A stretch of 64,000 nucleotides of DNA from Anthoceros angustus (Eukaryota > Plantae > Anthocerotophyta): contig VJWM01000106.1 in NCBI GenBank assembly GCA_010909165.1, forward strand, positions 372,001 through 436,000. The letters are read 5' to 3'. Each line of letters starts with the position of its first letter. Position 1 is the first letter of the stretch. The position numbers and the translations under genes were made by a program. The notes beneath the pieces were generated by a model that saw nothing but the letters and a program-made list of their open reading frames with translations, was not told where the DNA came from and made no database searches. Below, in pieces: positions 9,973-44,166 of the stretch.

Positions 9973-10029
9973 TTTGTGCAACTCAATGCAGAGGAAATAT
10001 ATGGAATATCCAGCTTTGCTCAGACTCCC

Positions 10030-20069: not shown

Positions 20070-20279
20070 CTCTTACCAACACTCGCACTTGCGCATTCAG
20101 GCACGCAAGAAGTCCGCATAGCTGAACATGGAGGACGTGTACTAAACCGTGTTAGTTGATAGCTATGTAGGAAGCTATTTTTGCGACACTAAATTATTAT
20201 TTTAATATTAAAGTGGAATATAAAAATATTTTTCTGTACTCAGCTACCTAGATTTAGGTAAGACTCCTTCATAGCCTGA

Positions 20280-20300
20280 TATGGAATACCGATCTCGTCA
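20280..20300 (+). repeat. Left terminal inverted repeat; its inner 12 bp (ccgatctcgtca) recurs at 20414-20425
   Basis: Exact reverse complement of 43693-43713. Confidence 0.95.
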
Positions 20301-21989
20301 GGAAGCCCTTTAGGGTTTTTTTCCATTGTGACCAAAGAAGTTTTCCGGCCGCATACGGCGGAAAACTCTGTTACACACTTGACGACATCGGCCGCCGCGC
20401 CCGCCTCGTGGTCCCGATCTCGTCACTAAGCATGTGGTGTTTGTGTCGAATCTTTTGTGGTTGTGACACACAATGTTTTCGCTTTTAGGGTCGTGAGGGC
20501 ATGGGCCATCGGACATCCATTCGCATGACCCCATCTCGCCTGCTTGCTTTGCCATCACGAACCGTCACGAGGGCTTTATGGGAGATAGCGTGAGGAGAGG
20601 GCTCAGATGCGCAAAGGCATATGTGCCCTTGTGCCTCGATAGGCGGCGCCATATGCGGCTACCGGGCTATCGCAGCCCATCCAGCGTCAGGCGACAAGGC
20701 CAGCACAGCCTCCGAGCGCACACCATCTTCACAACCGGCCTTTACATTCCACCACAACAAAGCCACCACTGGCTCAACTCTCAAAACGCCGTAACAAACA
20801 AATCCAAATTGTCACCGCCTCCTGTGTCATGGTGAGCGACAATGTCACCGCCTCCTGTGTCATGGTGAGCGACAAAAACACTTTTCTCCAACACCTAGCT
20901 CACTCCCTGCAAGGGGCCACACGCCTCACACCTCGTGCACCATAGACCGCGGCGGGGTGATGGCGCCCACGCCCACGGGTGGCTTCACCTCCGCCCACCG
21001 GTGGAGGTATTCGGGCAATGCCCTCGTGCTCCCGCACTGCAGAGTGTTAGTGCCATGTGCACCGATACATGTCCGGAGGAAGTCCATGTCCCAATCCCTT
21101 TGCATATGCATTGTCCTCGCCATCCGCAGCTTCTCGACAACCCATGCAGCGGGGCCCATACGATTCGGGCCTCGCGGTGGCGCACACCATCTTCACAACC
21201 GGCCTTTACATTGCACCACAACAAAGCCACCACTGGCTCAACTCTCAAAGCGAACAAACAAATCCAAATTGTCACGCTCCCGGTCATGGTGGCACCGCAT
21301 CACGCTCCCGGTCATGGTGGCGCACAAAACAATTTTCTCCAGCCACCTAGCTCACTCCGGAAGAACCGCCGTCGGGCCACCGCCCCTCACACCTCGTGCA
21401 CCATAGGGCGGGGTGATGGCCGTCCACGCCCAGGGGTGGCTTGACCTCGTCCAGGTGGAGGTATTGAACAATCGTCCCACCTGTGCTCCTGCACTCCCTG
21501 CAGTGTTGTTAGTGCCATGTCGGCGATACATGTCGGGAGGAAGTCCATGTCAATCCCTTTGCATATGCATTGTCCCTCGCCATCTGCGGTTCTGCACAAC
21601 CATGGCCCCATACGATTGATTCCCGTGCACACGCACAAAATGGCGATCGCCCTCCCTCCACAATGTCAGAACTCTACAGACAAAATAAATGGGCAGGCGA
21701 CTGCGATTTGCTCACCCCGCCAAGAATTCTATGCCGTGGTGGTGGCATCTCGGGGCCACGCTTTGTGCATACCGAGGGCCACCACATCGAACTCCTCGCC
21801 ATCGCCCTCCCTCCACAATCTTTGCGCCTCTGAGACAAAATAAATGGGCAGGCGACTGCGATTTGCTCACCCTCGGCAATTCTATGCGAGTGGTGGCATC
21901 TCGGGGCCACGTTTTGTGCATCTTGAGGCCACCACATCGAACTCCTCGCCATCGTCCTCCTCACCCCCATATGCGGGTGCCACCCACCC

Positions 21990-22990
21990 TTGTAGTCGAC
22001 CTTCTTCTTGAATGCGATTGCGAGCACATGGCCGGAATGTCTGCCGGCTGCCCCGATCTTCCGCACCGGTGCCTATTCCATACCGCCTCCAACGCCGAGC
22101 TCCGCCTCATCGTGGGCATGAAGGTCACGTCACGGGGAATGGATGTGCTGGGTTGGTGATGTCCAGTCACGCTCCTCACCATATCCATCATGTACCCCTT
22201 GTAGAGGAATGCCCACTTCTCTCCCAAGGACCGCCAAATGCTCAATCCTCGCAACAATCCGCATTCATCGACTTACCGCCATCGCATAAGGAAAACGCAC
22301 CAACCTCCTAACTTTTACAGTTGTGCACGGAGGGGCGCGGATGAAGTTGCTTCCATGTGCCCTTGGCCTCGCTCGGTTCATATCGCCTCTATTAGGTTGT
22401 GCCGCGTAGTCCGACCGAATCCGCGGATGCCCAAACTTCCTCACCGCTTCCACATAGGCGTTGAAAATCGTCGTTCCCGCTTGTTATCCTCCAAGACCAA
22501 CTGACGAATGGGTTGCCCCATCTATGGCCCCATGCACTCAAGTAGAATTGGTACATCTTGTCATAAGTCGCAAGACGAGGCAACCCCGCCCGATTGCGCA
22601 CAACTCGCAATCACTTCTTCCACCGCGAACTGCGAACATCGCAGCCCTCCTCTCACGCACTTACAATCCATATGCCACATGTACATGGGTGTCGCATTGG
22701 TTCGACGCGCGGATGCGATCGCCGACCGTCGTGCCATGTGCTCCGGCTGCATCAAACGCAGCGCCTCCGTCACCTGCCTCCTAGGGATTTCGATTCCATC
22801 CAGCCTGCACCGCACGAATCGTATTCCGGCGTTCACGCCGTCTTGGGTGATGGGTGTGTGCGTGGCAATCGCGTGCACACCTCCTCCACGGACAACCTCC
22901 CATACACCCGCGCCATGCCGCCGTGCTGCAGAGCCTCGTCACCGTGCTCAAGCCGCAGCCTAGCTCCGTGGTAGGCCTTTCAATGGTCTC
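21990..22990 (-). pseudogene. DDE transposase, integrase-core (IS3/IS481-like), intron-containing, frameshifted as assembled; N-terminal exons duplicated at ~23030-23740 and ~24130-24720
   Basis: Motifs in order: GIEIPRRQVTEALR..PEHMARR; PMYMWHMD (22665-22678, D1); HGAIDG (~22508-22537); EDNKR..TIFNAYVEAVRKFGHPRIRSD (22409-22417, D2); SVHN (22319-22331) / RIE..W (22239-22249, E); VTFMP..WNRH (22069-22080). Confidence 0.85.
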
Positions 22991-25900
22991 CCCGCTGCAA
23001 GTGCACCGCCAAATCATACAGCGGTGTAGGCGCCACGCCCCTCCTCTCACGCGCACAATCCATATGCCACATGTACATGGGTGTCGCATTGGTGTCTTGG
23101 GCCGGGATCGCATCGACCGTCGTGCCATGTGCTCCGGCATCAACGCGGCGCCTCCGTGACTGCCTCCTTGGGATTTCGATTCCATCCGATTGCGCTCTGC
23201 ACCGCGAATCGTATTCCGGCGTTCACGCCGTCTTGGGTGATGGGTGTGCGTGGCAATCGGCGCACACCTCCTCCACGGACAACCTCCCATACACCGCCAT
23301 GCGTGTGCCGATCAGAGCCTCGTCCGTGCTCAAGTGCAGCCTAGCTCCGTCGGTAGGCCTTTCAATGGTCTCCACCAGTCTTTGCCGCCAAATCATACGG
23401 TTGCGGTGTAAGCGCGCAGCGTCTCCTATGCATCCTTCATCTCCACCTTCCAGCCCCTCATCCCCACGGCTCCTCGCACGAGAAATTGCCTCAAGTTTTC
23501 ACCGTCCGTGATGATGATGGGCTTCATGACCTCCTCGGTCGGCGCACCGCCACCATCTTCCTCCTTCGTCGCCCGGAAGGCCGCGCGCGCGCGCATGGGC
23601 ACCCTTCACTGCCGTTTTGCCCCACGTGATGGCCAAGGTGGAACTTGGTGGCCTCAACACCCTCCAGACCTCGCGCCGCCTACTGCATGGGGAGCGCTTT
23701 TCCTGCCCATGCGCCTTCCTCCCGTTCAAACCCCAAATGCACCTCTCGCGGCGCCGATTTGATCCTCCTAACACTTTCCCCGAGTAATGGCATGTCCGCA
23801 GCCAAGGGTTTCACAAAGTGACGGCTCGATCACCGTTAGCGTATGCCCACTCCGATTTTTGTTCCACGGACGGTCCGCGCGCGCATGGACGGGGTTTCAC
23901 ACCGCGTGATCCGCAGAGGTAGATCACCGCAAAGTTCGGCAAAGCCCGTAGCTATCACGCACTTTTGCTTCCTTGATTTCATTCATTGTTTGAAGTGCAC
24001 CGCAAAGAACACTTCCAAACCAACGACGCACCAAACACCGTCGTATGTGAACAATCTAGAATGGGCGCTTCACGGCGTGCGGGCAAACACACTTGCCCCC
24101 CATTTCGGGGCCATCGACAATTAGCGCGGCGCCTCCGTGACCTCCTTGGGATTTCGATTCCATCCGATTGCGCTCTGCACCGCGAATCGTATTCAGCGTT
24201 CACGCCGTCTTGGGTGATGGGTGTGTGCGTGGCAATCGCGTGCACACCTCCTCCACGGACAACCTCCCATACACCCGCGCCATGCCGTGTGCCGATCAGA
24301 GCCTCGTCACCGTGCTCAAGCTGCGGCCTAGCTCCGTCGGTAGGCCTTTCAATGGTCTCCACCTTGCAAGTCTTTGCACCGCCAAATCACGTTTGCGGTG
24401 TAAGCGCGCACCCGCGTCTCCTATGCATCCTTCATCTCCACCTTCCAGCCCCTCATCCCCACGGCTCCTCGCACGGTACACAAGTTTTCACCGTCCGCAT
24501 GATGATGGGCCGCCATGCGACCTCGATGCGGCCGTCTTTGGCGCACCCCCATCTTCCTCCCGTCGCTTTGGCACGGAAGGCCGCGCCAGCGTCCATGGGC
24601 ACCCTTCACTGCCGTTTTGCCCCACGTGATGGCCAAGGTGGAACTTGGTGGCCTCAACACCCTCCAGACCTCGCCTACCCTGCGGAGCGCTTTTCCTTGC
24701 CCCATGCGCCTTCCTCCAGTTCAAACCCCAAATGCACCTCTCGGTAGCGCGATTTCGATCCTCCTAACACTTTCCGCCCGAGTAATGGCATGTCCGCAGC
24801 CAAGGGTTTTCTGACGGGGCTCGATCTTAGCGTATGCCCACTCCGATTTTTGTTCCAGGGGCGTCCGATTCAAGCGCTTGCGGGGTTTTACACACGCATC
24901 TGCAGAAGTACTGCAAGTTCACGTGCGCCCGTAGCTATCACGGTTTACTTTTCGTTTCCGCATTTCATTCATTGTTTGAAGTGCGACAAGTGCACTCCAA
25001 ACACTTCAAACCTAGCGCACCAACACCTTGTCCGTATGTGAACAATCTAGAATGGGCGCTTCACGGCGTGCGGGCAAACACACTTGCGTCCACCGCCCAT
25101 TTCGGGCCGGCATAGGATGGCTGCCTCTCCCTATCTTCACTCTTGTGCCGCTGGCCGCAAACCCGGCAAATGGCGAACTGCGCCTTACCTCAATGCGCAG
25201 GGTTCCACGACGGTCCTCGGTGCGAACAAAAGGCATGGGATCTTCCAGCTATCGAGCGTATCCCGCGACCCCCATTGTGTGGCATGCCACGATAATCGTC
25301 ACATGCTTCGTTTGGAATACTCCCTCTTCGTTCGATTCAAGTCCATGTAACATATGAAATGCTCCGTCTGTTGTACACGAACGGCAATGAGCGTGACCCA
25401 CAAAAATTGTGTTGATCCAACTCCACAGGAGGATGCTCAATGTCCCAACCGCCGACAAACGAGCCTCACGCATGTTCCAATCACCGTGTGGCCCGGTCCA
25501 GCACATGTGACGCCGGTCCCATTCCGCCCAACCGCCTCACCACTAGCTTCCAACTCCACTTCTCCGATTGCGAACATCCATCGCTATCATTCCCTCCACT
25601 GCGACCATAGGGTGCCATCCAACTGCTTTCCTCCACTTTCGAACGACGGTGATTGCGAAAAGGCGTCCTTCTCACGAAAACTCCCACGAAGCCTCCATTG
25701 ACTTCTCACGAGCATGGTCACGGTGGCGTTCCTATCTCGATGGTCGCACGCAGATTGCAATCCCGGCTCGCGAATTGCATCCACAACGGCACCAACGTGC
25801 CATGCCGATTCTTTGGCTCCAAAGATTCCGTGCCACATGACACCGCCACCGAGGCACCTTCACTCCACCTCCAACCTCACCTCAATGGTCAGGCCACAAT

Positions 25901-28369
25901 CGCCTCTCCACGGCGAAAATGAAATCTTTGTGCATTGCGGACAATCGGAACCTCCAATACCATGAGTACCCATTTCCCGGACCAGATCGCACACATTTCT
26001 CGCCTCCCGGGTACCATGTACGCTCGACATGCGGAGTCGGAGTGGATTTGCCGGGACTCTCCCACTCCCACACCGGCCGCCCGGCTTCCGCGAGCCACCG
26101 CCGCTTCCACGGCCTCCTCCGCGCCCCCGCCGTCGCGCATGTGCCATCGTCGCCGATTGAGCGCCCGGCGAGGCGTTCGGCGCGCTTCGGACGGCCATCA
26201 CTAAAACCGCCGCCGATGACCACTCGCCACCGAACCTCCGGCCGGCACAATATCGCTGCACGCCGGCCGATCATCTGCCCGCCGCCTTCCTCCACTTCGC
26301 CGATCGCGCTGCCCGGCCCGGGCGCCCGACCATCCACCTCGCCGCCTCGGATCGCCCTGCAGTGGACGACGCGCCCATCGCCCACGCTCTCGTGTCGGTA
26401 GCAAACTCGAATGGATCATACCCACCGCACAAGAGTTGTGAGGCTCGAGACGCCGACCGCAAAGCTTACATTTCGCACTGGAGGCCACATAGCCCCGCTG
26501 CACTGCCGCTGCCAGGCGGCGAGTCAGACGCCCTTCTGAAAGCCGCCAAGCATGGCGTGGGCAATGGAGACCGCCGCTGTGTGCAATCCACCGCAATCAA
26601 TAGCGAGGTTTGAGAATTCATGGTGACCCACGCAGATGCGATCGCGCACGGCCGAGCACCTGCTCCACTTGTAGGTGCACCTCCACGAGATCCACGTCAA
26701 AACGCCTCCCAAGGTGGGTGCGCCAATCGGTTGATCTCGCCACCGCGCCGGGCTTCCACTCCACCTTCCGCTCGGACGATCGCACGGGTTGTCCATGGCC
26801 TCTCCCACTCCTCCTCCGCCGCCGCCATGGCTCCTTCCGGCGCCGCGCCGCCGCACCTCCTCCTCCATCGCCTCCCGCTTCAACGCACCATCATGGCGGG
26901 CATTGAATGTGCACGGAATCATAGGTATACTTGCACGGCCTCGGGATCGTCGAGATCCCCGACACCGCCTTTACGCCGCCGCCCGCACTCGCATCCGCAT
27001 CCGTCCGCAGCCGCAGTATATGCCATGTTCCGCCACCGCACTTCCGCCCGCGCGCGTGTGCAATTGCGATGCCATGCGTGCCACATGCGATTCTCGCCAC
27101 ACCGTGCATTTTCAGCAAACATTGAATGTGCAATCGCGCACGCCGCACACCTTACAACGATCCGCAACTTAGCGGCACACCATCGACGCGGACCGTGCAG
27201 ACCGCAGAAGCCGCCGCCTCGCAACCCTTACTTGCTGGCGTTCACCATCACTGTGCTCCGCACCATCACGCCATTCCCAACCGCAACCAAGATTACAATT
27301 TTGTGCCTTCACGGCCGCACTTGGTTCGCTTCCACCGCCTGCACATCCTCGCCAAGTACTCGAACATGGTTCTCCGTCACGGTTGATATCCCGGAACAAC
27401 GCTCCGTCTTCTCATTCCATTCCATTTCTCCATACCGCACGAAATCAACCAATTCATAATACCTCATAGGCCACCTCTCCACAAGGTCGGTGGCACTCGA
27501 TGCGTGCACTGGAAAACCAAATCCTAAGGTCGCCACACGCAGCTCTCCTTTCCGGTACCTCTTCCATCCCGACGGCGCCAACGCCGAACACTTGGTGCAT
27601 GAAAATGTGGCACTCCACCGCCCGGTACACTCGCAGAATTTGTCCACCGCCACTCCATCCGGCCCTCACGGCAGTCGACAGACGGCAAGTTTCTGGATAG
27701 CCCTCTATGCGCAGACATCGGCTTTGATGGTCCTCCACAAATGCCAAGAACTCGACACCCAGTTGATGGGAACCATAGGCCACGCAGAATGTACTCGCCG
27801 AGCTTTGCATCTCCCATTCCTCCGCCGCCCCTTCCACGCCCGCACAAGGCCGTGCCGCCAGACCGCAAACATGCGCATCCGGCACCGTGATTTGCGCGGT
27901 CATCTGACATGGGCTCCTACTACTCACCGGGCCACCTTCCACTCTTCAAGCGCAACCGCCAGAGGAACACACCAACCCACGGCCGCCGCCACGCCATCGC
28001 CGCCACGATCTTGTGTTCCTCATCCTCCTCCACGGCACGGGCCGGGCGCGGCGCACCCTTCCACCCACCACCGCCACCCGCCGCCTTCCTTGCACGTAAT
28101 GCGCACCCGCTTTCCCTTCCACCACCCGCAACCGCCCCTTCCACCGCCCCTTCTCCGCACGGGTTGCGACCGCCGAAAGCGATCACGGCACCCGCTCCAA
28201 ACCCAACCGACACCGCCGCCACCACTAATTTCCCCTCCCTTTGGTGGCGTGGCAGTCCTCGCACATGTACCAAACCCTTTCACTTTGAGGCGCCATACAC
28301 AACCTCCCAATTTTCATTTCCAACCAATCCATCTTCCGGCGTCAGTGGTGTGGTTTTGATATCTGCCGG

Positions 28370-29920
28370 ACATACCCAGGAAAGAGGTCGCAAATCTATA
28401 TACAAAAACAAAAATCATAACCCAAGGAAAAGGTGCACATGCACATGGTATGTATGCATGATGCATGGTTGCAATCGGATGCGTGAACATGTCTACCTAG
28501 ATCCGTGTCATAGCGCAATCCATCTATCCGCATCGATGTCTATATGGCACTACGCATGACACATATAGGTCATCGCATCTACATAGAAAAAACCGAAACA
28601 CCATAACCCAAGGAAAAGGTGCACATGGCATGCACATGGTATGTATGCATGATGCATGGTTGCAATCGGATGCACGTGAACATGTCTACCTAGATGCTGT
28701 GTCATCGCGCAATCCATCTATCTGCATCGTGATGTATATATGGCACGGTACTATGACACATATATAGGTCAGCAAATCTATATACAAAAAACCTAAACAC
28801 CATAACCCAAGGAAAAGGTCCACATGACATGCACATGGTATGTATGCATGATGTATGGTTGCAATCGGATGCACGTGAACATGTCTACCTAGATCTTGTG
28901 TCATAGCGCAATCCATCTATCGCATCGTCATGTCTATATGGCACGCATTATGACACATATATAGGTCATCGCATCTACATAGAAAAACCTAAACACCATA
29001 ACCCAAGGAAAAGCGCATACGTTGTTAAGTGCATACATATCATTTGTTCAAGGCCAAGGACAAGTATGATAATAAATAAACCCAAAGTTTCGACATTCGG
29101 TGTGAGGTGGCACGTGATTCAACCTGTTCCTTGGGCTTGACATACGCTACCGTGAACATGTCTATATATGTGGCTTCCTTCCCAATCATAATTCGATTGT
29201 AGAAGTTTGTCCGCATGGAACATATGCCCCGGGAGGTTCAGGTCAAGTAGACAAGGTCTTGTCTTCTTTCTCTCTTATGTCTTGTGGGATCCGCATTTTC
29301 CGGTGGGAGCCTCGGTCCAACCCCTTCTGTGACGTGTTTCCTTGGTCTTCGACTTTAGCGAACATGTTGTCATACCACTTGCCATATGCCATGTGATTTG
29401 GTAGGGGTGCATGTGATGAGGGCTGTGCATTGAATGTATGGCATGCACATGGTGTGTATGCATGAAGTATGGTTGGCATGTTGTGTATGTGAACATGCCT
29501 AGGTAGATGTTGTGTCATGCCACAATGAATCCATGTGCATCGTGATGCATGTGACGCACGGTACCATAATAGATATATAGGGTTGCGAACACATATATAC
29601 AGAATACATGAACAACATAACCCAATGAAAAGGGCGAGTACGTTCTGTACTGCATACATATCATTTGTTCGAAGGCCAAGGACAAGTAGGTTTTTAAATA
29701 GACCTATAGTGCCTACCAGCAGGTGAGAGGTGGCACGTGATTAACCCTGTTTCCTTGGTCTTCGACATACGGTACCAGTAAACATGTCTATATATGTGGC
29801 TTCCCTACCCATTCATTATTCGATTGTAGAAGTTTGTCTGCATGGAAAGGCATCCATACTTCGGCCATGCACCTGGGCTTCTTTCTCTCTTCTGACCTTT
29901 GGGATCTAGTGGGAGCGTTA
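28370..29920 (+). repeat. Internal repeat block, ~190-bp tandem unit (ATGC/CATG-rich)
   Basis: cataacccaaggaaaag at 28416, 28602, 28801 and 28997, with a variant at ~29616. Confidence 0.9.
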
Positions 29921-30959
29921 GGCAACCAACTTGATCAGGGCCAGCCTCGGTCAAATGCATTGCTTTCACCAGTTGCCTTGGTCTTGGACATAAGGGACCA
30001 TTGTTCATGTGTTCATATAACGAATATGCACCCTCCTTCATTATTGTCATTGTCATTCGAGGAGGGAGCTGCCGGAGGCAGGCCCTGCAACGTCATCCTC
30101 GTTTCGAACTGCAAGTGCATTGTGTTCTATGGCAGGTCGTTCGCTGTCCAATTGCACATTCAACCTCGTCCAGTTGCACATTCAACCTGCAATTGCCTTT
30201 TTTCGCATGTTATGCATTTCACCAATGTAAGGCATTGTATGCGCTGAGAAATTTCGCGTTAGGCATTGTTGGTTCGTGGTCGGCATTTTCCTTCTTTGGT
30301 TTGTTGGGTGGGGTGGGTTGGGGCGGGGTTGAGCCGGTGGGGCCGGTTTGTGGTGGTGGGGCGGGGTTGAGCCGTGGGGCCGGTTTGTGGTGGTGCCGCT
30401 GGGGTGGGTTGGTCTTTGGGTTGGGTTGGGGCTGGTTGGTGTGGGTTGGGGCGGGGTTGGTAGTGGGGCGGTTTGTGGTGGTGGGGCGGGGTTGAGCCGG
30501 TGGGGCATCTTGGTGCGGGCTCACGCCGGGCCGGCAGTCGCCCTCGTGCGGCCGCGGGCGGATGGCGCGTGGGCTCGCCTGCTACCGTCCGTGGAGCGGG
30601 CCGGTAAGGCGGGAGGACCGGCCGCTGGATGGGGTCGGATGTGGGAGTGACCAGACAAATCTCCGAGCCATGAGGCCGCTGGAAGGGCCAAGGCAACCAT
30701 GCCATCGAAAAATGTGAAGTGATGATGGCTATTGGCGCCAATATGGGCCATGCTCACGGATTTCATGGCAAGCAATATGGGATGGACTTCATGAGCCGGA
30801 CCGGACCATGGCGACTACGAAATACCTTATAAATGCATAGCCGTGACTCGCATGCTGCGCAATGCGACCATAGACATCGGATGAGAAGGGCATTTGAATA
30901 AGCCAGGGGCACAATGAATTGCTTCCACAACGTCAGGTATTGGTGTGCGGTCCGGACAC

Positions 30960-33527: not shown

Positions 33528-34723
33528 GTGAGTGCGAAGATGCCATTAATTGGTACCGGGGCACGCGAACGCAACGCGGTGGTGATTGCAGTTGAGGCGG
33601 GCATGGAGTGCCAACAAGCTCGACAATTTCGAGGCCGAGGGGGGACCTTTCCACCGCTTAGAGTGCGATCGCACTGCACGGACGGTGATGTAGTCCACGA
33701 GGTTGGAGCGATGGGCGGGCCTACGAGGCGGCGATTCGAGGCCGAAGTACTCGGAGTCGCCATTTGTGGACGGCGTGTTCGAACGCAACGCGTCGGCGGT
33801 ACACATTACCACATCGCCCGAGTGCATCCGACCCCTACGAAAGATGGTAAGATATATGGTCAATTGATGCAAAATGTGCGTGACGGCAGATGCCTCCTTG
33901 CGAGCCATGTTCTTGACCACGCTCTACATGCCGCCGCAAATGGCATTGAGGTGAGCCGTCCCATGACATTTGCCACACTCGCGCACTAGGGAGCCAAAAG
34001 GATGGCGTGCACAAGGAGTGGAAGGATGCGGGCACAGAGAGGACGTTGAAGAGGGCTTTCAAGACGGATATGTTGACAACCCACCCACAGCTCATGGCCA
34101 TCCTCCAAGAACTGAAACGCGGGGCTCGGCTGGGCCAAGAGGAGCAGCAGGCTGCGATTTCCTCGGCCGTTGGTCTGATGGCAGACAGGCTCCCGGATTT
34201 TTTCAAGCATGTGGCCGACCTGAAGCCCTCGCATGTCCTGGGGCGGCAGGTGGCGCGCATTCGGAAGAAGGTGCAGGACCAGCTTTTATTCACCGGTGCG
34301 ACGCTTGGCGGTGGGTGGGAGAGGGGTTCCGGCATGTGGTGCACAGCCTGGACAAGAGGGCCATGTTGGAGTGTCTAGGGGAGTGCACGTTTGAGAGTGT
34401 CACCAAGTTCTTCACTGCCACGCATGGATGCAGGGCAGACGCGTAGCGGAGTGAGATTCGAGGCCTGCTTGCCGCAGTTGAGAGAAATGTTCTGTGAAAT
34501 CGTCAGAGAGATGTCATTCGGCGATAGAGCGCGCCTGTTCACCTTCATCACCGACAGAGTTTACTTCTCGGAAGCAGTGCCAATGGTGGTCGAGCAAGTT
34601 CCTCCGCATTTGGGCACCGCCTCCGAGGACGTGCTCGCACTCTCCTCCCGCCTATGTCTCAAGCTCGTGATGGCCACGCGGTGAGAAGCCATCCGCATGA
34701 ACTCCGTGTATGGGAACGCTTGA
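33528..34723 (+). pseudogene. HECT-domain E3 ubiquitin ligase (transposon cargo), frameshifted as assembled
   Basis: N-lobe EVGAMGGPTRR (~33699-33731) and KIYGQLM. C-lobe EIVREMSFGDRARLFTFIT, RTCSH (Cys codon 34632-34634), PAYVS, and terminal EAIRMNSVYGNA* (stop 34721-34723). Confidence 0.72.
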
Positions 34724-36339
34724 AAGGCCGGCCTCGAGTCGGACTGCTTCATTAGAGACCGCAAGTGGTTTCGGTTGTGTTTGTCCCGGCCCCGCACAAG
34801 AGGGCACTAATGTGAAGAGACTTTGAGCTGTCCGCACTCACGCTTGGTTTGCGATGGCGACACGAAAACGAGGCACGCACCAGAGAAGACGCCTCGACGT
34901 GAATTGCTTTCCGTCACCAATTGAGAATGGATGTAAACAAGGTCGGGCGCAATAATACGGAAAATGAGGGTTGGCGGTGGCATTTGCGCCGTCGAATGGC
35001 GCGAACCAAGTGCACCCGCCGAGGTTCCAATCGGCCGCGCGCCCGACAACCACATTGGGAAATGGAAAGAGGTGCGTGAGGTTTTGGAGGCGGAAGGTCT
35101 TCCAGGTGGGCGTGCATACGCATGGCGGCTGCGGTGGTGCACGCAGCAAGGTTGTTGTCATTGCGACAATCCGAGGTGGACAGCTCAAAGTTCTTGCTGA
35201 CATCGGATGCGAGAGTCGGGACACGAAGAAGACAAGCTGCAGAAGTGTGTGCGACGTGCGGTCATGCGGTTCCGGGTGCTCCTCGATGAGACAGCGAGGT
35301 TTGGGCCACCGCATTCCGCCGGTGAGGTGCCGGGCATGACGCCGAGGAGTTTGATGCGTGTGGAAGACGGGGATGCAGCGCAGGCGCGGATGCGGAGGAA
35401 GGCGCTTTGGTGCATCATCGCGATGGTGAGCCCACTCGCACGCACACCATCCGCCTCAGCGCCGCGTGCCTTATGCGGTGGGAGGAAGGTCCTTCAATGC
35501 GCAGTGGAGGCGGGCGGCGATCGGACGGGCGAGAGGCGCAGGAATGGCCTCCAAAGGGAGGTGATTGCGCCGCCGCAATCACCGGAGGCATAGCGTGAAC
35601 TTGCTCGGGTGGCGATGGCGGCGGCTGCTCATAATAGCAATGGCCGCGATCGCGAGTGGAAGAGTGGTTGTGGAATGGCGGTAGCAAAGGGCACTGTTTT
35701 ATACTCCTCCATAAGTTTGGTGTTTCGCAAACCAAGGACAGGACTGTCGCAGTGAATTGTAATCGGTCCAAAGCCTAATGACGAATTTGCCTGCCTGTAG
35801 TGGTCAGGGGTCCAAAGCACAACGACTTCGGTGTTTTCGTTTTTTCATGTGCTGTATCATGGCCGGAACTAGTCCTCGGCCTATGGCCCAATGACGAAAA
35901 CAACATCGCTTGTTCCATTCGCCTTAGGCCGAGGACTAGTTCATGACATGATTTTTTTTCCGTTGACGCCCAAAGGCCAAGGACTAAAATGTACTCGGAT
36001 TGACGAATGGTCCGAATGTAAGGTCCGATTCAAGTGTAGGAAGAAAATCCATTTCCCAACTACACGGTACTTGCCTATCCCGCCTCGCCGCCTATATATA
36101 CGAAGACAAGGCCTTCCCTGGACCATCCCGACTGGCCATGAAAGGGAAAATACTCATTGGCCTTTGGAGCTTTCACATTGGCAATGAAGGGAACAAAACT
36201 CCTTGGCCTTTGCACCAATATGTCAATCAATGAATGGAAGGAAGACCTTGGCCTTTGGACCAAACCGAGAATCACCAAATGAAAAGTACTAAGACATTAG
36301 CGGACCATTGGTGGCCCATTACATAAAAGACAACAAGGA

Positions 36340-37560
36340 ACCGACGCTCCCACTAGACAATGCGGTTCCCAAAGGTGAGAAGAGGGAAAAGAGAAAAGAA
36401 GGGACAGTATGGCTGCCTATCCTTTATGACAAACATGTACAATCGAAGAATCATAGGTTGGGTAGCCCATATATAGGCAAAACCACCGGGACTCTCGATG
36501 AAGCACCACCGCACTGATGGTAGGCACTATGATCTATTTAGAGTCCTACTTCTCCTTGGCCTTTGAACAAATGATATTTATGCGCTTAACAACCTACTAG
36601 CCCTTTTCCTTGGTTTATGATTTTCAGTATTTTCTATATAGGTGCGTGACCTATATGTGTCGAGTACCGTGCCTTACAAACATCGCGATGCACATAGGTT
36701 GATTGTGCCATGACACAACATCTAGGTAGACATGTTCACATACACCACATGACGTGGTCCAAAGGCCAAGGACGTTTCTTCCTATATATAGGTGTAGGCG
36801 GATAGGCAAGTAGCGTGTAGTTGGTAGTCCATGGTTGGGTAGCCCATATATAGGCAAAAACCGGAACTGTTGATGGAGTGCCACCTCACACGATGGTAGG
36901 CGATTAGGTATATTTGTAATCCCACTTGTCCTTGGCCTTGAACAATTGATATTCATGCAATCAAGAACGACCGCCTTTTCCTTGGGTTATGGTGTTTACG
37001 TAGTTTGAATATAGATGCGACCTATATATGTGTCATAGTACCGCCGAACATGCATCACGATGCACATAGATGGAAAAGGTGCCCATGACAGAGCATCTAG
37101 GTATACATGTTCACATACTTCACATGTCAACCATCCATCCCACATGCATGCATACCATGTGCTTTCCATGTGCACATTTTCCTTGGGTTTTGATTTTTAG
37201 GTCTTTTGTATATAGATTCGCTGACGATGTATGTGTAGAGTCGTCGAACATATATCACGATGCACATGCACATGGTATGTATGCATGATGCCCGTTGATG
37301 TGATGCATGTGACCATGTCTACGTAGATCTGTAGTGGGCACCTTTTCCTTGGGTTTTGATTTTATGTCTTCTCTATATCGCACGTGACCTTTATATGTGT
37401 CATGGTACCCTTCCGACATGCATGACGGTGCACATACATGGATTGTGCCATGGCACAAAGATCTAGGTACAAATGTTCGATGCATCACATGTCAACCAGC
37501 CATCATGCATACATACCATGTGGATGCCATCCATAGGCAATGCACATGTGACATTGGTCC
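36340..37560 (-). repeat. Inverted copy of the 28370-29920 repeat block (repeated again at ~38930-39960)
   Basis: ttttccttgg at 36604, 36976, 37177 and 37343. acttgtccttggccttgaaca (~36924) is the reverse complement of ~29045. acgctcccactaga (~36344) is the reverse complement of ~29905. Confidence 0.85.
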
Positions 37561-40500
37561 AAATGCGAAGGACTTTTCTTCCTATTTATAGGCATGCAAG
37601 GCGGAAAGGCAGGCACCGTAGATGCCATGGATAGATGGCGTGAACACATCGGAAAAGGCGGAAGTGGTAGGTTGACTAGCGGTCAACGATCGTCCGGACT
37701 CAAGCAAGTATAACCTTAGAAGGTTGGAGCTGCTGCAAGCTGAAGCGGCGGTGGCAACATGCAGCTGCCATCAACGCAGTGGTGTTGGAATCTGCGCAGC
37801 TGCGGTTGCGAGCGGCCAAAGCAGGCTGGTGGCGGATGATGCATTGGGGTGCCAAATGCCGGTATCTGAACAACAGGCGGCTTTCTTGATTTAGGCGCAA
37901 GTTGGGGCTCTTCACTCAAGAACTCCAAGTGCCACTTTTCAAAGTGGAAGCTCACGAGCATAGGCGCGGGATATGGGCGGCGGCGGCGAGGTGGAAGACA
38001 TGGAGCTCGACACACCCATGTCGGCCGGGGCGGAGGAGGAGGCGACCGGAAGGCATGGCGGGCGGGCGGCGGCGGCGGTGGCGGCGATGAGGAAATGGCC
38101 GATGCGGCGGCGGGCGGCGAGCATGCGGCGGCGGCGGCGAGCATGCGGCGGAGGCGGTGGCGTGGAGGGCTGCAGCCCCCACTGAGGCGCAGTAATGCTT
38201 GAAGGCTGCCCACGGACGAGGCATGCAAGGCGGGCAATCAGTGTAGATGCCATGGATAGATGGCGGGGAACACATCGGAAAAGGCGGAAGTGGTAGGTTG
38301 ACTAGCGGTCAACGGCGGACTCAAGCAAGTACGCAGTTAGAAGGTTGGAGCTACTGCAAGCTGAAGCGGTGGCAACATGCACGACCATGCAACCGCAGTG
38401 GTGTTGGAAAGAATAAAGCGGCGGTGCATGCGGCGGCAGCCAAAAAGTGCGCTGGTGGCAGTGATGCATTGGGGTGCCAAATGCGGTGAAATCTGAGACA
38501 AGCGCTTTCTTGATTTAGGCGCAAGTTGGGCGGCTCTTCACTCGGCAACTCAAGTGCCACTTTTCAAAGTGGAAGCTCACGAGCATAGGCGTTTTGCGAT
38601 ATGGGCGGCGGCGAGGTGGAAGACATGGAGCTCGACACACCCATGTCGGCCGGGGCGGAGGAGGAGGCGCCGGAAGGCATGGCGGGGAGCCTGCCGCCGA
38701 GGCGGTGGCGACGATGAGGAAATGGCCGTCTGGCCGGCGGGCAATCGCTTCTGCTCCGGCGGCGGCGGCAGGCGGAGGCGGTGGCGGCGTGGGGCGGCGG
38801 CCGGCGAGGCGCGCGCGAGCAATGCTTGAAACCGGGCGAGCATGCGGCGGAGGCTCGCCGCTGATGCAGAGGCGCGGGCATCCCGATGCCGCCGGTGGAG
38901 CCCTCCGCAGCCTGGCACCACCTCACCGATGGTAGGCACTAGATCTATTTAGAGTCCTACTTCTCCTTGGCCTTTGAACAAATGATATTTATGCTTAACA
39001 ACCTACTAGCCCTTTTCCTTGGTTTATGATTTTCGTATTTTCTATATAGGTGTGACCTATATATGTCGTAATCGCCTTACAAACATCGCGATGCACATAG
39101 GTTGATTGTGCCATGACACAACATCTAGGTAGACATGTTCACATACACCACATGGCGTGGTCCAAAGGCCAAGGACGTTTCTTCCTATATAGGCGGTAGG
39201 GCGGGGATAGGCAAGTAGCGTGTAGTTGGTAGTCCATGGTTGGGTAGCCCACATATATAGGCAAAAAACCGAACTGTTGATGGAGTGCCACCTCACGATC
39301 GATGGTAGGCGTTAGGTATATTTGTAATCCCACTTGTCCTTGGCCTTGAACAATTGATATTCATGCAAGAACGACTAGCCCTTTTCCTTGGGTTATGGTG
39401 TTTACGTAGTTTGAATATAGATGCGACCTATATGTGTCATAGTACCACGAACATGCATCACGATGCACATAGATGGAAAAGGTGCCCATGATGAGCATCT
39501 AGGTATACATGTTCACATACTTCACATGTCAACCATCCATCCTACATGCATGCATACCATGTGCATGTGCACATTTTCCTTGGGTTTTGATTTTTAGGTC
39601 TTTTGTATATAGATTCGTTGGCGTATGTATGTGTGAGTCGTCGAACATATATCACGATGCACATGCACATGGTATGTATGCATGATGCCCGTTGATGGTG
39701 ATGCATGTGACCATGTCTACGTAGATCTTGTCGTGGGCACCTTTTCCTTGGGTTTTGATTTTATGTCTTCTCTATATCGCACGTGACCTTTATATGTGTC
39801 ATGGTACCCTTCCGACATGCATGACGGTGCACATACATGGATTGTGCCATGGCACGACATCTAGGTACAAATGTTCGATGCATCACATGACAACCAGCCA
39901 TCATGCATACATACCATGTGGATGCCATCCATAGGCAATGCACATGTGACATTGGTCCAAATCGAAGGACTTTTCTTCCTATTTATAGGCATGCAAGGCG
40001 GGGAAAGGCAATCTGTAGATGCCATGGATAGATGGCGAAACACATCGGAAAAGGCGGAAGTGGTAGGTTGACTAGCGGTCAACGTCCGGACTCAAGCAAG
40101 TATACGTTAGAAGGTTGGAACCGCAAGCAAGCTGAAAGCGGTGGCAACATGCACGCCATCTGGCCGGTGGTGTTGAAAGCGAATAGTGCAGCTGCTTGGG
40201 AGCGGCCAAAGCAGTGCGCTGGTGGCAGTGATGCATTGGGGTGCCAAATGCCGGTGAAATCTGACAGAGGCTTTCTTGATTTAGGCGCAAGTTGGGGCAG
40301 CTCTTCACCAAGAACTCCAAGTGCCACTTTTCAAAGTGGAAGCTCACGAGCATAGGCGTTTTGCGATATGGGCGGCGGCGAGGTGGAAGACATGGAGCTC
40401 GACACACCCATGTTTGCCACGGGACGGAGGAGGAGGCGACCGGAAGGCATGGCGGGCGGGCGGCGGCCGCGGTGGCGGCGATGAGGAAATGGCCGATGCG

Positions 40501-41300
40501 GTGGCGGCGGGCAGAACCTGCTCCGGCTGGCGGCGGCGAGGCGGTGGCGGCGTGGAGGGCTGCAGCCCCCACTGAGGCGCAGTAATGCTTGAAGGCTGCC
40601 CACGGACGAGGCATGCAAGGCGGGCAATCAGTGTAGATGCCATGGATAGATGGCGGGGAACACATCGGAAAAGGCGGAAGTGGTAGGTTGACTAGCGGTC
40701 AACGGCGGACTCAAGCAAGTACGCAGTTAGAAGGTTGGAGCTACTGCAAGCTGAAGCGGTGGCAACATGCACGACCATGCAACCGCAGTGGTGTTGGAAA
40801 GAATAAAGCGGCGGTGCATGCGGCGGCAGCCAAAAAGTGCGCTGGTGGCAGTGATGCATTGGGGTGCCAAATGCGGTGCTGAGACAGGAGCTTTCTTGAT
40901 TTAGGCGCAAGTTGGGCGGCTCTTCACTCGGCAACTCAAGTGCCACTTTTCAAAGTGGAAGCTCACGAGCATAGGCGTTTTGCGATATGGGCGGCGGCGA
41001 GGTGGAAGACATGGAGCTCGACACACCCATGTCGGCCGGGGCGGAGGAGGAGGCGCCGGAAGGCATGGCGGGGAGCCTGCCGCCGAGGCGGTGGCGACGA
41101 TGAGGAAATGGCCGTCTGGCCGGCGGGCAATCGCTTCTGCTCCGGCGGCGGCGGCAGGCGGAGGCGGTGGCGGCGTGGGGCGGCGGCCGGCGAGGCGCGC
41201 GCGAGCAATGCTTGAAACCGGGCGAGAGCATGCGGCGGAGGCTCGCCGCTGATGCAGAGGCGCGGGCATCCCGATGCCGCCGGTGGAGCCCTCCGCAGCC
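36516..41300. repeat. Tandem duplication, ~2.4-kb unit (36516-38925 / 38926-~41300), each with an internal ~0.63-kb doublet
   Basis: gatctatttagagtcctacttctcc at 36531 and 38942. gccacttttcaaagtggaagctcacgagc at 37931, 38556, 40323 and 40942. Confidence 0.88.
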
Positions 41301-43692
41301 TGGCGTGCCACCTTGGCGATCCCAACAAGCGGCGGCGGAGGCGCTGCTTGCAGCCACAAAGGGCTGGGCATGGGTTTGCGCCCGCCCAAACCGGAGGCGG
41401 AGGCGGCGGCGAGCATGCAGCCCGCCAATGGCCGCAGTGAGGATGGTGGGGCAAGCGACACCGAGGGTCGCAGCAGCGGGTTACCGCAGCGGAGGATGAC
41501 GGCCGCGCCGCAGCCGACGCCAGGGGTGGATCGGCCGACGCAATGGCCGCAGTGAGGGTGGCCGCATGCGCCAATGGTCGCCAGTGGGCGAGCATGCAGC
41601 CCGCCAATGGCCGCATGCGCCCGGCGGCGGCAGCGAGCGGCGAGGCGGCGGACATTCGCTGCACCACCAACGGCGCAAGGCAAGGATCGCAACCCATGTG
41701 GTTGCGGCCAAGGCGAGGTCAAACACAGAGGCGCATGCGGGACGGAGGACGGGCATCCCTTGCGCCTCCTTCTCGTGACGTGCCTGGGGGGCGAGGGCGA
41801 GGGAGGCGGAGGCGGCGTGAGGATGGTGGGGCAAGCGGCTGTGCCGGGAAGGAGCCGTGCGGGCGCCCGGAGAGTGGAGGAGAACGAAACCGAGGAGGGA
41901 GAGGAGGCGGCGGCAGCGAGCGGCGAGGCGGCGGCAGCGAGCGGCGAGGGAGCACGGACAACAATCGGAAGACTCCGATGGTAAGTGAACGCACAATCCG
42001 CGTGTTGCAATGTGTTTGACAATGCCGGTGGGTTCGATTGTCATTGTCATGCCTCGTAATGCCGGTTGCAAGTGGTGAACTTTGCCATGCCCGGTACTCA
42101 TATGTCTGCGAGTTGGGTTTGCAGGTGTGGACGGAGTGGACGAGACCAGCCCTGCTGTGGTCATCTACGAAAAACGGAACTTCGCTCGATCCGCTATACG
42201 GACGTGGAGCGCCGCCAAGATCGAACGAGACCGGGCGCGCGGCGCTGAGCGGAGGCAGCAAGGCTGAGAGAAGAGCTGGCCGAGCTCATCGTTGAGCTCG
42301 AGGCAGCCGGCGTGGGCACCCGGAAGAGGAAGAGGGTGCACCAATGGGGGGCAGACCTAGCGGGGCGGAGGCGGGGCGCCTGTGGCCAAGATGCAAGGCG
42401 AGAGTGCCGGAGGGCGAACCTGCCGCCGAGAGGCGTGAATGGGGCCAGCACCGGTGGGGAGGGGGCCACCGCCCAAGGCCGCAACAAGGTGGGGCATCCA
42501 CCCAATGGAGCTCCGAGTATGGTAGCAACGCGAAGTCCAATGCAGTAATCGACGCCGCCATGACGGGCGCCATCGCCCTTCTTGAAGTGGTGGAGAAGGT
42601 GCGCAACCCGAGGTCCATGACCGACATGGAGGGAGTGATGGATGACTCACGATCGCCGACAACGCAGCCTGGAATGATCGGTCGCTCATGGAATACATGA
42701 ACGCAGAATGGCCGCATCCTCCATGCCATCGGGCCAATGTGCAAGTGCGGTTGCCGGTGGTGGATACCACCCTCTCCGAATCGCCCCCGCCACGCCTTCC
42801 AGCTCGGTCCCCTTCCCATTGGTGCCGGGATGAACCCGCCCCCCAACCTCACAGGATGGTGCACTGCCCGCCATGGCACACGGTGCACCTCCCATGTCCG
42901 GTGCGGAGGGACATTCGGCCCCTCCACAAAGAAAAGACAGGGGCGAACGGAAGTCTGAGGAGGAGGAGCCAAGTTCGGAGCACAAGAGGATGGAGGGGCC
43001 CGCCGAGGCTCTTCCGCGGCGGGCGTGGGGAGGTGTTTTTGTTTAGGAGCGCCCCACCATGAGGTGTGAGCGCAGACTATGTTCGGATGTTTTTGGTTGA
43101 ACGGCGATGCGCCCGCGGTGTGTCCGTAGGACCGGAAGTGGATTTGTAGGACGCAGTGACATTGCCTGCTTGATGAGGTTGAGGAGGGATAGTGTGAAGC
43201 ATGTTCGGATCTGTAATGCCCGTGCATTGCACCGGTTTCCTTCGGCAATGTGTTCGGTTTGAAAGGTGAAGTTACGATCATCTTCGTCCGTCGCCCCATA
43301 CATCCAATCGCAAGCACAACACAAGCATGTTAGTAGGCAAGCACACCGAACGTAGGGATCGCTCCCACATCCTTCCCGCATATATAGTGAAAGCGGCATG
43401 TGTAAGCGGAGGATTTGCGCTTTCGAACGCGGCCATACCGCGAACAAAAGTTCACTGTGTATGTGTTGCCCGCCATGTTTGTGTGTAGACCCGATGAAAA
43501 CCCTAACACCGTCATCAAAAAACATGTGTTACACCATCAACATGAACGGTGATAGAATGTTTTTCCCCGACGAACCCGTGAAGTCGATGTGGCACGATTA
43601 TACGTGTATTATACGTGAGTATCGAAAAGATTCCGTGGCATATCCTCGTAGCGTACACCGAAAAGAAAGAAAGTCACACACAGACTCCCATG

Positions 43693-43713
43693 TGACGAGA
43701 TCGGTATTCCATA
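43693..43713 (-). repeat. Right terminal inverted repeat
   Basis: tgacgagatcggtattccata, followed by the TSD gcctga. Confidence 0.95.
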
Positions 43714-44166
43714 GCCTGATCTTCTAAGACGTTATGTCTATCAACTATAATTCAAAGGGAGTACAATATGAGTTGCGAAATCTTTTGTAAAGCTGATTAC
43801 TCGTAGGAGCAGGTTTCTTTAGCGTTTCATACGGCACCCTCGTGTATGCATGGTTCCCGTGTGCGAGTGTACCCAAAAATCATGCATTACAGATAAGTTA
43901 CGGGAACGTGTGTGCCTTCAGCAATGGCGAGGCATTGCCCATCACATATTATAAAACAGTATTGTAATTTGATTTCCATAGCAATTGTACAGGAGCAAGC
44001 TCAAATGCTTGCTTTCCCTTGCCCACTCTCTCGGCCTTCTAGCGACTACCCTAGCGTTGGAGCCAGAAGACTGCCTGAGTGACTATAGGCTGGTCCTTGG
44101 TTGTGTGTGCAAGGACGGCTGATGTGGAGAACGCCGATGCTCGTCTTGTTCACCACTGTACGCATC

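What the first reader, a model, noticed from the sequence alone, without database searches (positions are those of the whole stretch)
20274..43719. Complete ~23.4-kb IS3EU-like cargo transposon in a land plant
Seen: perfect 21-bp TIRs beginning TATGG, an exact 6-bp TSD, a subterminal repeat of the inner TIR, and a spliced DDE transposase with WHMD / HGAIDG / RSD / SVHN.RIE.W / WN.H motifs. Known: IS3EU elements have TAY..RTA termini, 6-bp TSDs and IS3-like transposases, and to my knowledge are described mainly from animals and fungi. Inference: a recently inserted, unusually large multi-gene member in a bryophyte-grade plant. Its GC/CpG richness suggests youth or horizontal origin.
Basis: partly seen in the sequence, partly recalled or inferred. 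Interest (0 to 1): 0.9.

Follow-up and report, generated by a model that had tools for sequence, protein, structure and literature searches.

The report
Giant GingerRoot/IS3EU plant transposon copy
This is a real 23.4-kb cut-and-paste jumping gene of the IS3EU/GingerRoot group, which was already described in mosses and clubmosses in 2019. Its enzyme gene cannot be read through in this noisy assembly and no passenger genes could be confirmed, so it is a sound but fairly ordinary find.

Summary
The ends are as described. There is a perfect 21-bp inverted repeat (TATGG...CCATA) at 20280-20300 and 43693-43713, and an exact 6-bp duplication (GCCTGA). The left end holds three copies of a 12-bp motif. 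Short-read contigs of the same species diverge exactly at 20280, and the end region is about 15-40 times single-copy depth, so this is a multicopy family.

A transposase gene is present on the minus strand at 22851-22066. I built a profile from Pfam rva_4 "integrase core" proteins fetched from metagenomes. Three of those elements are complete, with TAYGG ends and 6-bp duplications. Its three best hits among all six-frame pieces of the window are adjacent and colinear there. A frameshift-tolerant alignment scores 181, against 66±8.5 for shuffles.

As assembled, the gene needs about six frame changes. The sequence here is demonstrably indel-noisy, so whether the gene is intact cannot be decided.

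No cargo gene was confirmed. 273 open stretches gave no Pfam domain, and there is no codon periodicity except one fragment near 33950-34681. The HECT claim got no support. The rest is nested tandem and inverted repeats.

IS3EU/GingerRoot is already published for bryophytes and lycophytes, so the claim of novelty in plants fails. This scan has already reported several 20-28-kb copies elsewhere in this genome.

The parts
20274..20279 (.). Left copy of the 6-bp target-site duplication, GCCTGA
20280..20300 (+). Left terminal inverted repeat, 21 bp, starting TATGG
   Evidence: Seven short-read contigs of the same species diverge exactly here (loose ends at 20280).
20380..20425 (.). Two subterminal copies of the inner 12-mer of the repeat: 20380-20391 (-), one mismatch, and 20414-20425 (+). 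These are candidate transposase-binding sites.
   Evidence: 4 sites in the window against 0.18 expected.
20716..21960 (.). Tandem repeats: about 450 bp twice (20716-21165 and 21180-21617), and about 160 bp twice (21643-21810 and 21798-21960)
   Evidence: A short-read contig skips 20369-21557, so other copies lack this part (joints).
22066..22851 (-). Transposase gene remnant of the rva_4 / IS3EU type. The pre-catalytic region and WHMD lie at 22851-22666. HGAIDG...RSD lies at 22537-22409. SVHN is at 22331-22320 and RIE at 22249-22241. W...WNRH runs from 22239 to 22069. About 6 frame changes and 2 skips (101 and 61 nt) are needed.
   Evidence: profile hits with E 1.6e-7, 0.24 and 1.9, adjacent and colinear; tblastn with 28 relatives; frameshift-tolerant score 181, z 13.6 and 15.
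23039..25106 (-). Tandem duplicates of the 5' part of the transposase gene. About 390-bp copies lie at 23039-23415 and 24125-24407, with a second WHMD at 23069. About 1-kb units lie at 23144-24109 and 24125-25106.
28385..29918 (+). Array of an AT-rich repeat of about 199 bp
   Evidence: TRF: period 199, 3.3 copies, 87%
33950..34681 (+). The only coding-like stretch outside the transposase: one frame of 244 codons with a single stop. The family is unknown and the HECT claim is not supported.
   Evidence: best amino-acid composition score in the element; period-3 power 6.0 at 33961-34320. Negative searches.
36344..37546 (-). Inverted copies of the 199-bp repeat array. A second set lies at 38918-39944 through the 2.4-kb duplication.
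   Evidence: 71-85% complementary to 28438-29918.
36503..41304 (.). A 2.4-kb tandem duplication (36503-38916 and 38915-41304, 93%). It contains four copies of about 620 bp at 37590, 38219, 39987 and 40609.
43693..43713 (-). Right terminal inverted repeat, 21 bp, ending CCATA
43714..43719 (.). Right copy of the 6-bp target-site duplication, GCCTGA

Best explanation
The stretch 20280-43713 (23,434 bp) is one insertion of a cut-and-paste DNA transposon of the IS3EU/GingerRoot superfamily. It sits 205 bp upstream of the start of a GT47 glycosyltransferase gene in a land plant.

A DDE transposase of the rva_4 'integrase core' type would work as follows. It binds the 21-bp terminal inverted repeats, and probably the three 12-bp motif copies at the left end. 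It cuts the element out and joins it into a target cut with a 6-bp stagger. Repair of that stagger gives the GCCTGA duplication.

The element carries such a transposase gene near its left end, reading towards that end. In this assembly the gene is broken by about six frame changes. The local sequence is full of small indel errors, so the copy may be dead and moved by a relative's enzyme, or it may be better preserved than it looks.

The other roughly 20 kb is mostly non-coding GC-rich DNA that grew by nested tandem and inverted duplication. It is not a set of cargo genes.

Shown here: the ends, the duplication, the multicopy family, the transposase homology and the repeat structure. Inferred: the binding sites, the mechanism (from the family), and the source of the enzyme.
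For: Ends and duplication:
- establish the repeat, the 6-bp duplication and the subterminal motifs.
- The published signature of the group is a 6-bp duplication with TA..TA ends (PMC10045372) or TAYGG..CCRTA ends (PMC12730594). GingerRoot has a 6-bp duplication and occurs in bryophytes and lycophytes (PMC6839031).

Family:
- In a short-read run of the same species (flank contig without substitutions), depth at 20297-20493 is 171-435 against about 11 for a single-copy contig.
- Seven contigs diverge exactly at 20280.

Enzyme:
- The pattern WHxDG...HGxIDG found at least 120 metagenome contigs, 113 of them with the same 65-nt span.
- Their ORFs are Pfam PF24764 rva_4, with E from 1e-69 to 1e-80.
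- Three complete elements among them have TATGG or TACGG ends and exact 6-bp duplications.
- A profile of 28 such proteins ranks 22938-22564 (E 1.6e-7), 22483-22268 and 22537-22487 as the top three of 2586 six-frame pieces of the window.
- tblastn gives colinear matches at 30-40% identity.
- The frameshift-tolerant alignment scores 181. Shuffled profiles give 66±8.5 and other DNA of the element gives 57±8.

Noise:
- Short-read contigs differ from the window by about 60 gap letters against 18 substitutions in about 1 kb.
- Internal repeat copies differ by as many indel events as mismatches: 58 against 53, and 64 against 35.
- The transition/transversion ratio between those copies is about 0.8.

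Interior:
- No Pfam domain in 273 open stretches.
- Long ORFs are explained by GC content and TpA depletion.
- No GC periodicity by codon position.
- Period-3 power is 1.12 against an expectation of 1.0. Host PPR genes give 3-7.6.
Against: - No single piece of the transposase core reaches significance in Pfam.
- Nor does any in a phmmer search of 1.84 billion proteins; the two hits were spurious repeat proteins.
- Nor does any in the word-based searches.
- The homology therefore rests on my own profile. Its members were picked by two motifs that the window also carries, although most of the score comes from positions outside those motifs.
- The 11 residues that relatives have between WHxD and HGxIDG are not recognisable here.
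- Two candidate segments for the E-motif exist: RRLVR directly after SVHN, and RIE 70 nt further on.
- The inverted repeat is 21 bp, not the 100-150 bp of the Selaginella lepidophylla GingerRoot families (PMC6839031).
- Pfam missed the transposase itself, so piecewise domain searches have low power in this noisy DNA. A decayed cargo gene could be hidden.
- The repeat region may be mis-assembled, so the length is uncertain.
Confidence: 0.85

Rival explanations
1. An autonomous, possibly still active giant element. On this reading the transposase gene is really intact and spliced, and every break seen is an error of an unpolished long-read consensus.
For: - Conserved residues persist on both sides of each break. 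For example, IRQLVLEDNK is readable in the alternative frame between HGAIDGAT and AGTTIF, which removes the apparent TAA stop.
- About 6 breaks in about 700 nt equals the indel rate of roughly 1% per copy estimated from the internal repeats.
- Against short-read contigs, gaps far outnumber substitutions.
- The ends and the duplication are perfect.
Against: - Substitution-level losses at well-conserved positions: the [YFW][ST]R after IDG, and the GxEN after RSD.
- The block between the first D and HGxIDG is missing.
- There is an unexplained 70-nt insert before RIE.
- No N-terminal DNA-binding region was detectable.
- No RNA run holds the stretch.
- No contig was laid on 22267-25221.
Confidence: 0.3
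2. One reading: a multi-gene cargo transposon that carries, besides the transposase, functional passenger genes such as a HECT ubiquitin ligase.
For: - The stretch 33950-34681 (+) is the most protein-like of the element by amino-acid composition and period-3 signal.
- A short stretch (EIVREMSFGDRARLFTFITD) loosely resembles what I recall of the HECT C-lobe. This is memory only, not a test.
- Cargo-carrying IS3EU elements exist in fungi (PMC12730594).
- Gene-fragment capture is known for GingerRoot (PMC6839031).
Against: - Pfam gave no HECT or any other domain, even at E up to 10, on the four segments and none in all 273 open stretches.
- PDB sequence searches, against a bank that holds many HECT domains, gave nothing relevant.
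- The Atlas and homologue searches were blank.
- The rest of the interior has no codon periodicity.
- Its long ORFs are expected from composition.
Confidence: 0.07
3. Not one element. Either two separate family members each contribute one end around unrelated DNA, or the long-read assembly has created or inflated the structure.
For: - The interior is a patchwork of tandem and inverted repeats in noisy sequence.
- No contig spans it.
Against: - An exact 6-bp duplication flanks the two ends. The chance of that is 1 in 4096.
- The two ends are in the correct inverted orientation and are the only two matches in 64 kb.
- Earlier notes of this scan list further copies of nearly the same length in the same genome. 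I did not check these.
Confidence: 0.05
4. A recent horizontal arrival from another organism, which would explain the high GC and the undepleted CpG.
For: GC is 0.57 and CpG observed/expected is 0.99 inside, against 0.48 and 0.68 outside.
Against: - The family is multicopy with variant copies in this genome.
- The nearest relatives found are only 30-40% identical in protein.
- Undepleted CpG has simpler causes, such as weak methylation (reported for some GingerRoots, PMC6839031) or GC-biased processes.
- No donor candidate was found: the exact repeat has no match in the metagenome collection.
Confidence: 0.04

Closest known systems
GingerRoot (Cerbin et al. 2019, PMC6839031), DNA transposons of Selaginella lepidophylla, with reads from mosses and other lycophytes
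   Same: A non-seed land-plant host type, a 6-bp target duplication, TA...TA ends, an integrase-related DDE transposase, frequent defective copies, and interiors that pick up extra DNA.
   Different: The inverted repeat is 21 bp here, not 100-150 bp. The length is 23.4 kb, against 3.9-12.9 kb, even though that survey allowed up to 30 kb. The extra length here is tandem and inverted repeats, not identified host-gene fragments.
IS3EU superfamily (Repbase; Kojima 2023 PMC10045372 and Kojima 2025 PMC12730594)
   Same: A 6-bp duplication and TAYGG..CCRTA ends, exactly as published for the Pucciniales IS3EU. The transposase has the WHxD / HGxIDG / RSD / SxHN-RIE / WNxH layout. IS3EU and GingerRoot form one clade with 99% bootstrap.
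   Different: The fungal cargo-carrying members encode identifiable TET/JBP and alpha-kinase genes. No such gene is recognisable here.
Metagenome elements L091 (4679-12146), L104 (2280-8259) and L011 (634-5776) with intact Pfam rva_4 ORFs
   Same: TATGG or TACGG ends and exact 6-bp duplications. L091 shares the first seven bases, TATGGAA. Their transposases match the window's remnant at 30-40% identity.
   Different: They are 5-7.5 kb, with one open transposase frame and no large repeat-filled interior. Their hosts are unknown.

Membership tests
IS3EU/GingerRoot superfamily | 6-bp target-site duplication | tested here: met
   GCCTGA at 20274-20279 and 43714-43719. Criterion from PMC6839031 and PMC10045372.
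IS3EU/GingerRoot superfamily | Termini TA...TA, in many families TAYGG..CCRTA | tested here: met
   TATGG...CCATA. Criterion from PMC10045372 and PMC12730594.
IS3EU/GingerRoot superfamily | Encodes a DDE transposase of the IS3EU/GingerRoot lineage (homology) | tested here: met
   A profile of rva_4 proteins gives E 1.6e-7 with colinear weaker pieces. tblastn results are. The frameshift-tolerant score is 181, z 13.6 and 15. The same protein family sits in elements with TAYGG ends and 6-bp duplications.
IS3EU/GingerRoot superfamily | Open transposase frame with an intact D, D, E triad (autonomous member) | tested here: inconclusive
   WHMD, RSD and RIE are present, but in different frames, with about 6 frame changes. 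The sequence is indel-noisy.
IS3EU/GingerRoot superfamily | Transposase falls inside the IS3EU/GingerRoot clade in a phylogeny with Repbase, IS3, IS481 and Ginger sets | not testable with these tools
   The Repbase and GingerRoot protein sets are not on hand, and the remnant is too broken for a reliable tree.
IS3EU/GingerRoot superfamily | Other copies of the family have the same ends with different 6-bp duplications | tested here: inconclusive
   Seven contigs diverge exactly at 20280 with unlike flanks. That fixes the left boundary and shows several insertion sites, but their duplications could not be read.
GingerRoot families of Selaginella lepidophylla (narrow sense) | Terminal inverted repeats of 100-150 bp; elements of 3.9-12.9 kb | tested here: not met
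   The inverted similarity ends after 21 bp, and the length is 23,434 bp. So this is a different family of the same superfamily.
HECT E3 ubiquitin ligase (claimed cargo at 33528-34723) | Recognisable HECT domain (Pfam PF00632, or similarity to solved HECT domains) | tested here: not met
   No hit at E up to 10 in Pfam on four segments. No HECT chain in the PDB searches. Power is limited by the noisy sequence.
Cargo-carrying IS3EU of fungi (TET/JBP plus alpha-kinase) | TET/JBP dioxygenase and alpha-kinase genes beside the transposase | tested here: not met
   Neither family appears among the Pfam results for 273 open stretches.

The most novel reading that the evidence does not exclude
The 20-28-kb, GC- and CpG-rich elements of this genome could be a distinct giant lineage of GingerRoot/IS3EU that still moves as a whole. 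In that case it would have a spliced transposase that is intact in reality, the breaks being assembly errors. Its large repeat-rich payload, including the coding-like piece at 33950-34681, would be conserved between copies and would somehow escape CpG decay.
Probability: 0.12. Interest if true: 0.45.

Novelty: new member of a known kind. Interest (0 to 1): 0.2.

Why it matters
It adds a well-delimited, unusually long member, about twice the published maximum for plant GingerRoots, to a superfamily that has few characterised plant copies. It sits in the promoter region of a GT47 gene.

The practical lesson is methodological. In this assembly the repeats are so indel-noisy that domain searches miss even the element's own transposase. 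'Dead copy' and 'no cargo' calls on this genome therefore need polished sequence.

It does not open a new question. The superfamily, its presence in non-seed plants, its ends and its habit of carrying extra DNA are all published.

Tried and rejected
Searches that found nothing useful:
- Pfam on all stop-free stretches of 90 aa or more (145), on those of 60-89 aa, and on all minus-strand pieces of 20 aa or more in 21900-23450 (128). The best E was 0.009-0.02, which is the chance level.
- Word-based homologue searches with the 72-aa and 125-aa transposase pieces and the 142-aa coding-like piece were blank. The length window of that tool excludes full-length relatives.
- phmmer of the 72-aa piece against 1.84 billion representatives gave two hits. 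Both were repeat proteins matched through low-complexity motifs and were rejected.
- The ESM Atlas gave no usable hit on two pieces.
- The exact repeat in metagenome contigs gave 0 hits. The motif pattern in viral contigs gave 0.
- Rfam and tRNA scans of the element found none.
- A text search for the printed motifs, or for the Pfam name, in papers found nothing useful.
- The GingerRoot supplements are not held.
- Exact look-up of the two PPR proteins, tried to identify the genome, found them not on record. The organism stays coded.
- A sequencing-run search found one DNA run with a small share and no RNA run.

Ideas rejected:
- Inverted homology between the two halves as the cause of the mirror-image GC skew: none found.
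- A nested transposon bounded by the inverted 199-bp arrays: no sharp ends.
- The N-terminal DNA-binding region and the C-terminal tail of the transposase are not above shuffles.
- The alternative 10-bp duplication CATAGCCTGA would put the inverted repeats out of register, and the left boundary at 20280 is fixed by the contigs.

Steps left out and other remarks:
- I sent no joined or spliced transposase model to any search tool; the pieces were searched by reference.
- The only read-through was a local protein-to-DNA alignment with frameshift states.

Full report
**1. The observation**

The 21-mer TATGGAATACCGATCTCGTCA stands at 20280-20300 on the plus strand and at 43693-43713 on the minus strand. 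No other match with up to three mismatches exists in the 64-kb window, and none in 100 shuffles. GCCTGA flanks both ends, at 20274-20279 and 43714-43719.

The inverted similarity stops after 21 bp. The inner 12-mer recurs at 20414-20425, and with one mismatch on the other strand at 20380-20391. That is four sites against 0.18 expected.

A 10-bp direct repeat, CATAGCCTGA, can also be read, because the left flank happens to hold CATA. I reject that reading. It would put the inverted repeats out of register, and the left boundary is fixed independently (section 2).

The element is 23,434 bp. Its GC is 0.572 and its CpG observed/expected is 0.99. The flanks have 0.48-0.49 and 0.68.

**2. It is a multicopy family of this genome**

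One public DNA run holds part of the stretch. It is the same species: a 3.4-kb contig matches the left flank without a substitution.

- Summed contig depth is 171-435 over 20297-20493, against about 11 for the single-copy flank contig.
- Depth is 16-77 over 20.5-22.2 kb.
- Seven contigs stop matching exactly at 20280 and run on into unlike sequence.
- One contig joins 20368 to 21558, so other copies lack the 450-bp repeats.

The left end is therefore the true end of a repeated mobile unit.

**3. The transposase**

Piece-by-piece searches failed:

- Pfam.
- Two word-based homologue searches.
- phmmer against 1.84 billion proteins, whose two hits were repeat proteins.

I therefore fetched natural relatives. 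The DNA pattern for WHxDG, a gap of 24-45 nt, then HGxIDG found at least 120 metagenome contigs. In 113 of them the match has the same 65-nt span, which chance matches would not show. Six of their ORFs are Pfam PF24764 rva_4 'integrase core domain', with E from 1e-69 to 1e-80, plus a weak rve match.

Three contigs hold complete elements around such an ORF:

| Locus | Coordinates | End | 6-bp duplication |
|---|---|---|---|
| L091 | 4679-12146 | TATGGAACGCC... | GCTGTG |
| L104 | 2280-8259 | TACGGTGG... | ATCTAC |
| L011 | 634-5776 | TATGGCGG... | CGATTG |

They tie this protein family to exactly the ends and duplication that the literature gives for IS3EU: TA..TA ends with a 6-bp duplication (PMC10045372), and TAYGG..CCRTA ends (PMC12730594).

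A profile built from 28 of these proteins was run against all 2586 six-frame pieces of the window. The three best hits are neighbours on the minus strand, in profile order:

- 22938-22564: E 1.6e-7, profile positions 9-74.
- 22537-22487: positions 86-92.
- 22483-22268: positions 109-133.
- 22272-21964 follows weakly: positions 170-232.

A full-length profile gives the same result. Most of the significant score lies upstream of WHMD, outside the motifs used to pick the relatives.

tblastn with the 28 proteins gives colinear matches at 30-40% identity. A protein-to-DNA alignment that allows frameshifts covers profile positions 9-228 over 22851-22066, with 79 of 204 aligned residues identical. 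It scores 181. Forty shuffled profiles give 66±8.5, and twenty other stretches of the element give 57±8. The homology is real.

**4. Is the gene intact?**

Not as assembled. The alignment needs six frame changes and two skips of 101 and 61 nt.

- The 11 residues that relatives have between WHxD and HGxIDG are not recognisable.
- SVHN and RIE are 70 nt apart in different frames.
- A degenerate RRLVR directly follows SVHN.

Splicing alone cannot join the motifs, and no RNA run was found.

The breaks are, however, of the kind the assembly itself produces.

- Against the short-read contigs the window shows about 60 gap letters and 18 substitutions in about 1 kb.
- The internal repeat copies differ by as many indel events as mismatches, mostly 1-2 bp and mostly outside homopolymers.
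- The transition/transversion ratio between them is about 0.8.
- Conserved residues persist across the breaks. The apparent TAA stop at 22486-22484 disappears if the four codons ...LEDNK are read in the neighbouring frame, where they match the family's ...LE..NNK.
- Six breaks in about 700 nt equals the noise rate estimated from the repeats.

I therefore leave autonomy open. I put about 0.3 on a gene that is intact in reality.

**5. The interior**

Self-comparison shows nested duplications:

- 450 bp twice and 160 bp twice near the left end.
- Three copies of the transposase 5' part, and a 1-kb unit twice, over 22.6-25.1 kb.
- An AT-rich 199-bp repeat array at 28.4-29.9 kb, with inverted copies at 36.3-37.5 and 38.9-39.9 kb.
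- A 2.4-kb tandem duplication at 93% identity.
- Four 620-bp units.

None of the 273 open stretches has a Pfam domain. The long ORFs, up to 414 aa, are what dinucleotide-preserving shuffles give: 392±83. They show no GC periodicity by codon position, unlike the host genes.

Period-3 power tolerates occasional frameshifts. The values are:

| Region | Mean period-3 power |
|---|---|
| Expectation for noise | 1.0 |
| Whole element | 1.12 |
| Transposase region | 1.7 |
| GT47 gene | 1.8 |
| The two PPR genes | 3-7.6 |

One place stands out. The window 33961-34320 has power 6.0, and 33950-34375 is also the most protein-like stretch by composition. With 34379-34681 it forms one frame with a single stop.

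This is where a sister note places a HECT ligase. Pfam at E up to 10, three PDB sequence searches, the Atlas and a homologue search all gave no HECT or other relative. It may be a captured gene fragment, which GingerRoots are known to carry (PMC6839031), but its family is unknown.

One caveat applies to all of this. Pfam missed the transposase too, so negative domain searches are weak evidence in this sequence.

**6. Comparison with what is known**

GingerRoot was described in 2019 from Selaginella lepidophylla, with reads from 18 moss and 3 lycophyte species. It has a 6-bp duplication, TA..TA ends, sizes of 3.9-12.9 kb and inverted repeats of 100-150 bp. In 2023 it was shown to form one clade with IS3EU. 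Fungal IS3EU with real cargo genes were described in 2025.

The present element meets the defining features of the superfamily. It does not fit the narrow S. lepidophylla families, because its repeat is 21 bp and it is about twice as long.

This scan has already reported further elements of 19.6-27.9 kb with the same ends elsewhere in this genome. I used those notes as leads and checked the literature and the noise claim myself.

**7. Context and verdict**

The host is a land plant. A DYW-type PPR gene, a P-type PPR gene, a GT47 gene and an RBR-type E3 gene lie in the flanks. The insertion lies 205 bp upstream of the GT47 start codon at 20069.

Verdict: a real, well-delimited, oversized member of a known superfamily. 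The cargo is unconfirmed and autonomy is undecidable from this assembly. Nothing supports horizontal origin. Interest is low.

Noticed in passing
window 18449-20069 (-): The GT47 (exostosin) gene next to the insertion is split into two ORFs in different frames. They overlap by a few bases near 19262-19279 and cover Pfam profile positions 2-127 and 124-290. This is a frameshift rather than an intron: either a pseudogene or an assembly indel.
   Followed up: partly
window 20280-43713: GC skew is mirror-symmetric inside the element: negative from 20 to 28 kb and positive from 29 to 43 kb, switching at the AT-rich repeat array. The G-rich strand therefore runs from the centre towards each end. Yet the two halves share no inverted homology apart from the 199-bp repeats. 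Unexplained.
   Followed up: partly
L091 4679-12146; L104 2280-8259; L011 634-5776: These are three complete IS3EU-type elements in metagenome contigs, with open rva_4 transposase frames, TATGG or TACGG ends and exact 6-bp duplications. Their hosts are unknown.
   Followed up: partly
window 20368-21558: One short-read contig of the same species joins 20368 directly to 21558. Other family copies therefore lack the 1.19 kb that holds the 450-bp tandem repeats.
   Followed up: no
window 30302-30504: A G-rich imperfect repeat of about 19-40 bp (GGGGCGGGGTTGAGCC... units, seven copies) lies inside the element (family D5).
   Followed up: no
window 14963-17704 (-) and 49167-51833 (-): These are two long intact PPR genes. 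The first has a DYW deaminase domain, as an RNA-editing factor does. The second is a P-type gene with very strong period-3 signal. They show that unique parts of the assembly are well polished, unlike the element.
   Followed up: no
window 56844-57959 (+): An ORF with RING (zf-C3HC4) and IBR domains, that is an RBR-type E3 ligase gene, outside the element.
   Followed up: no
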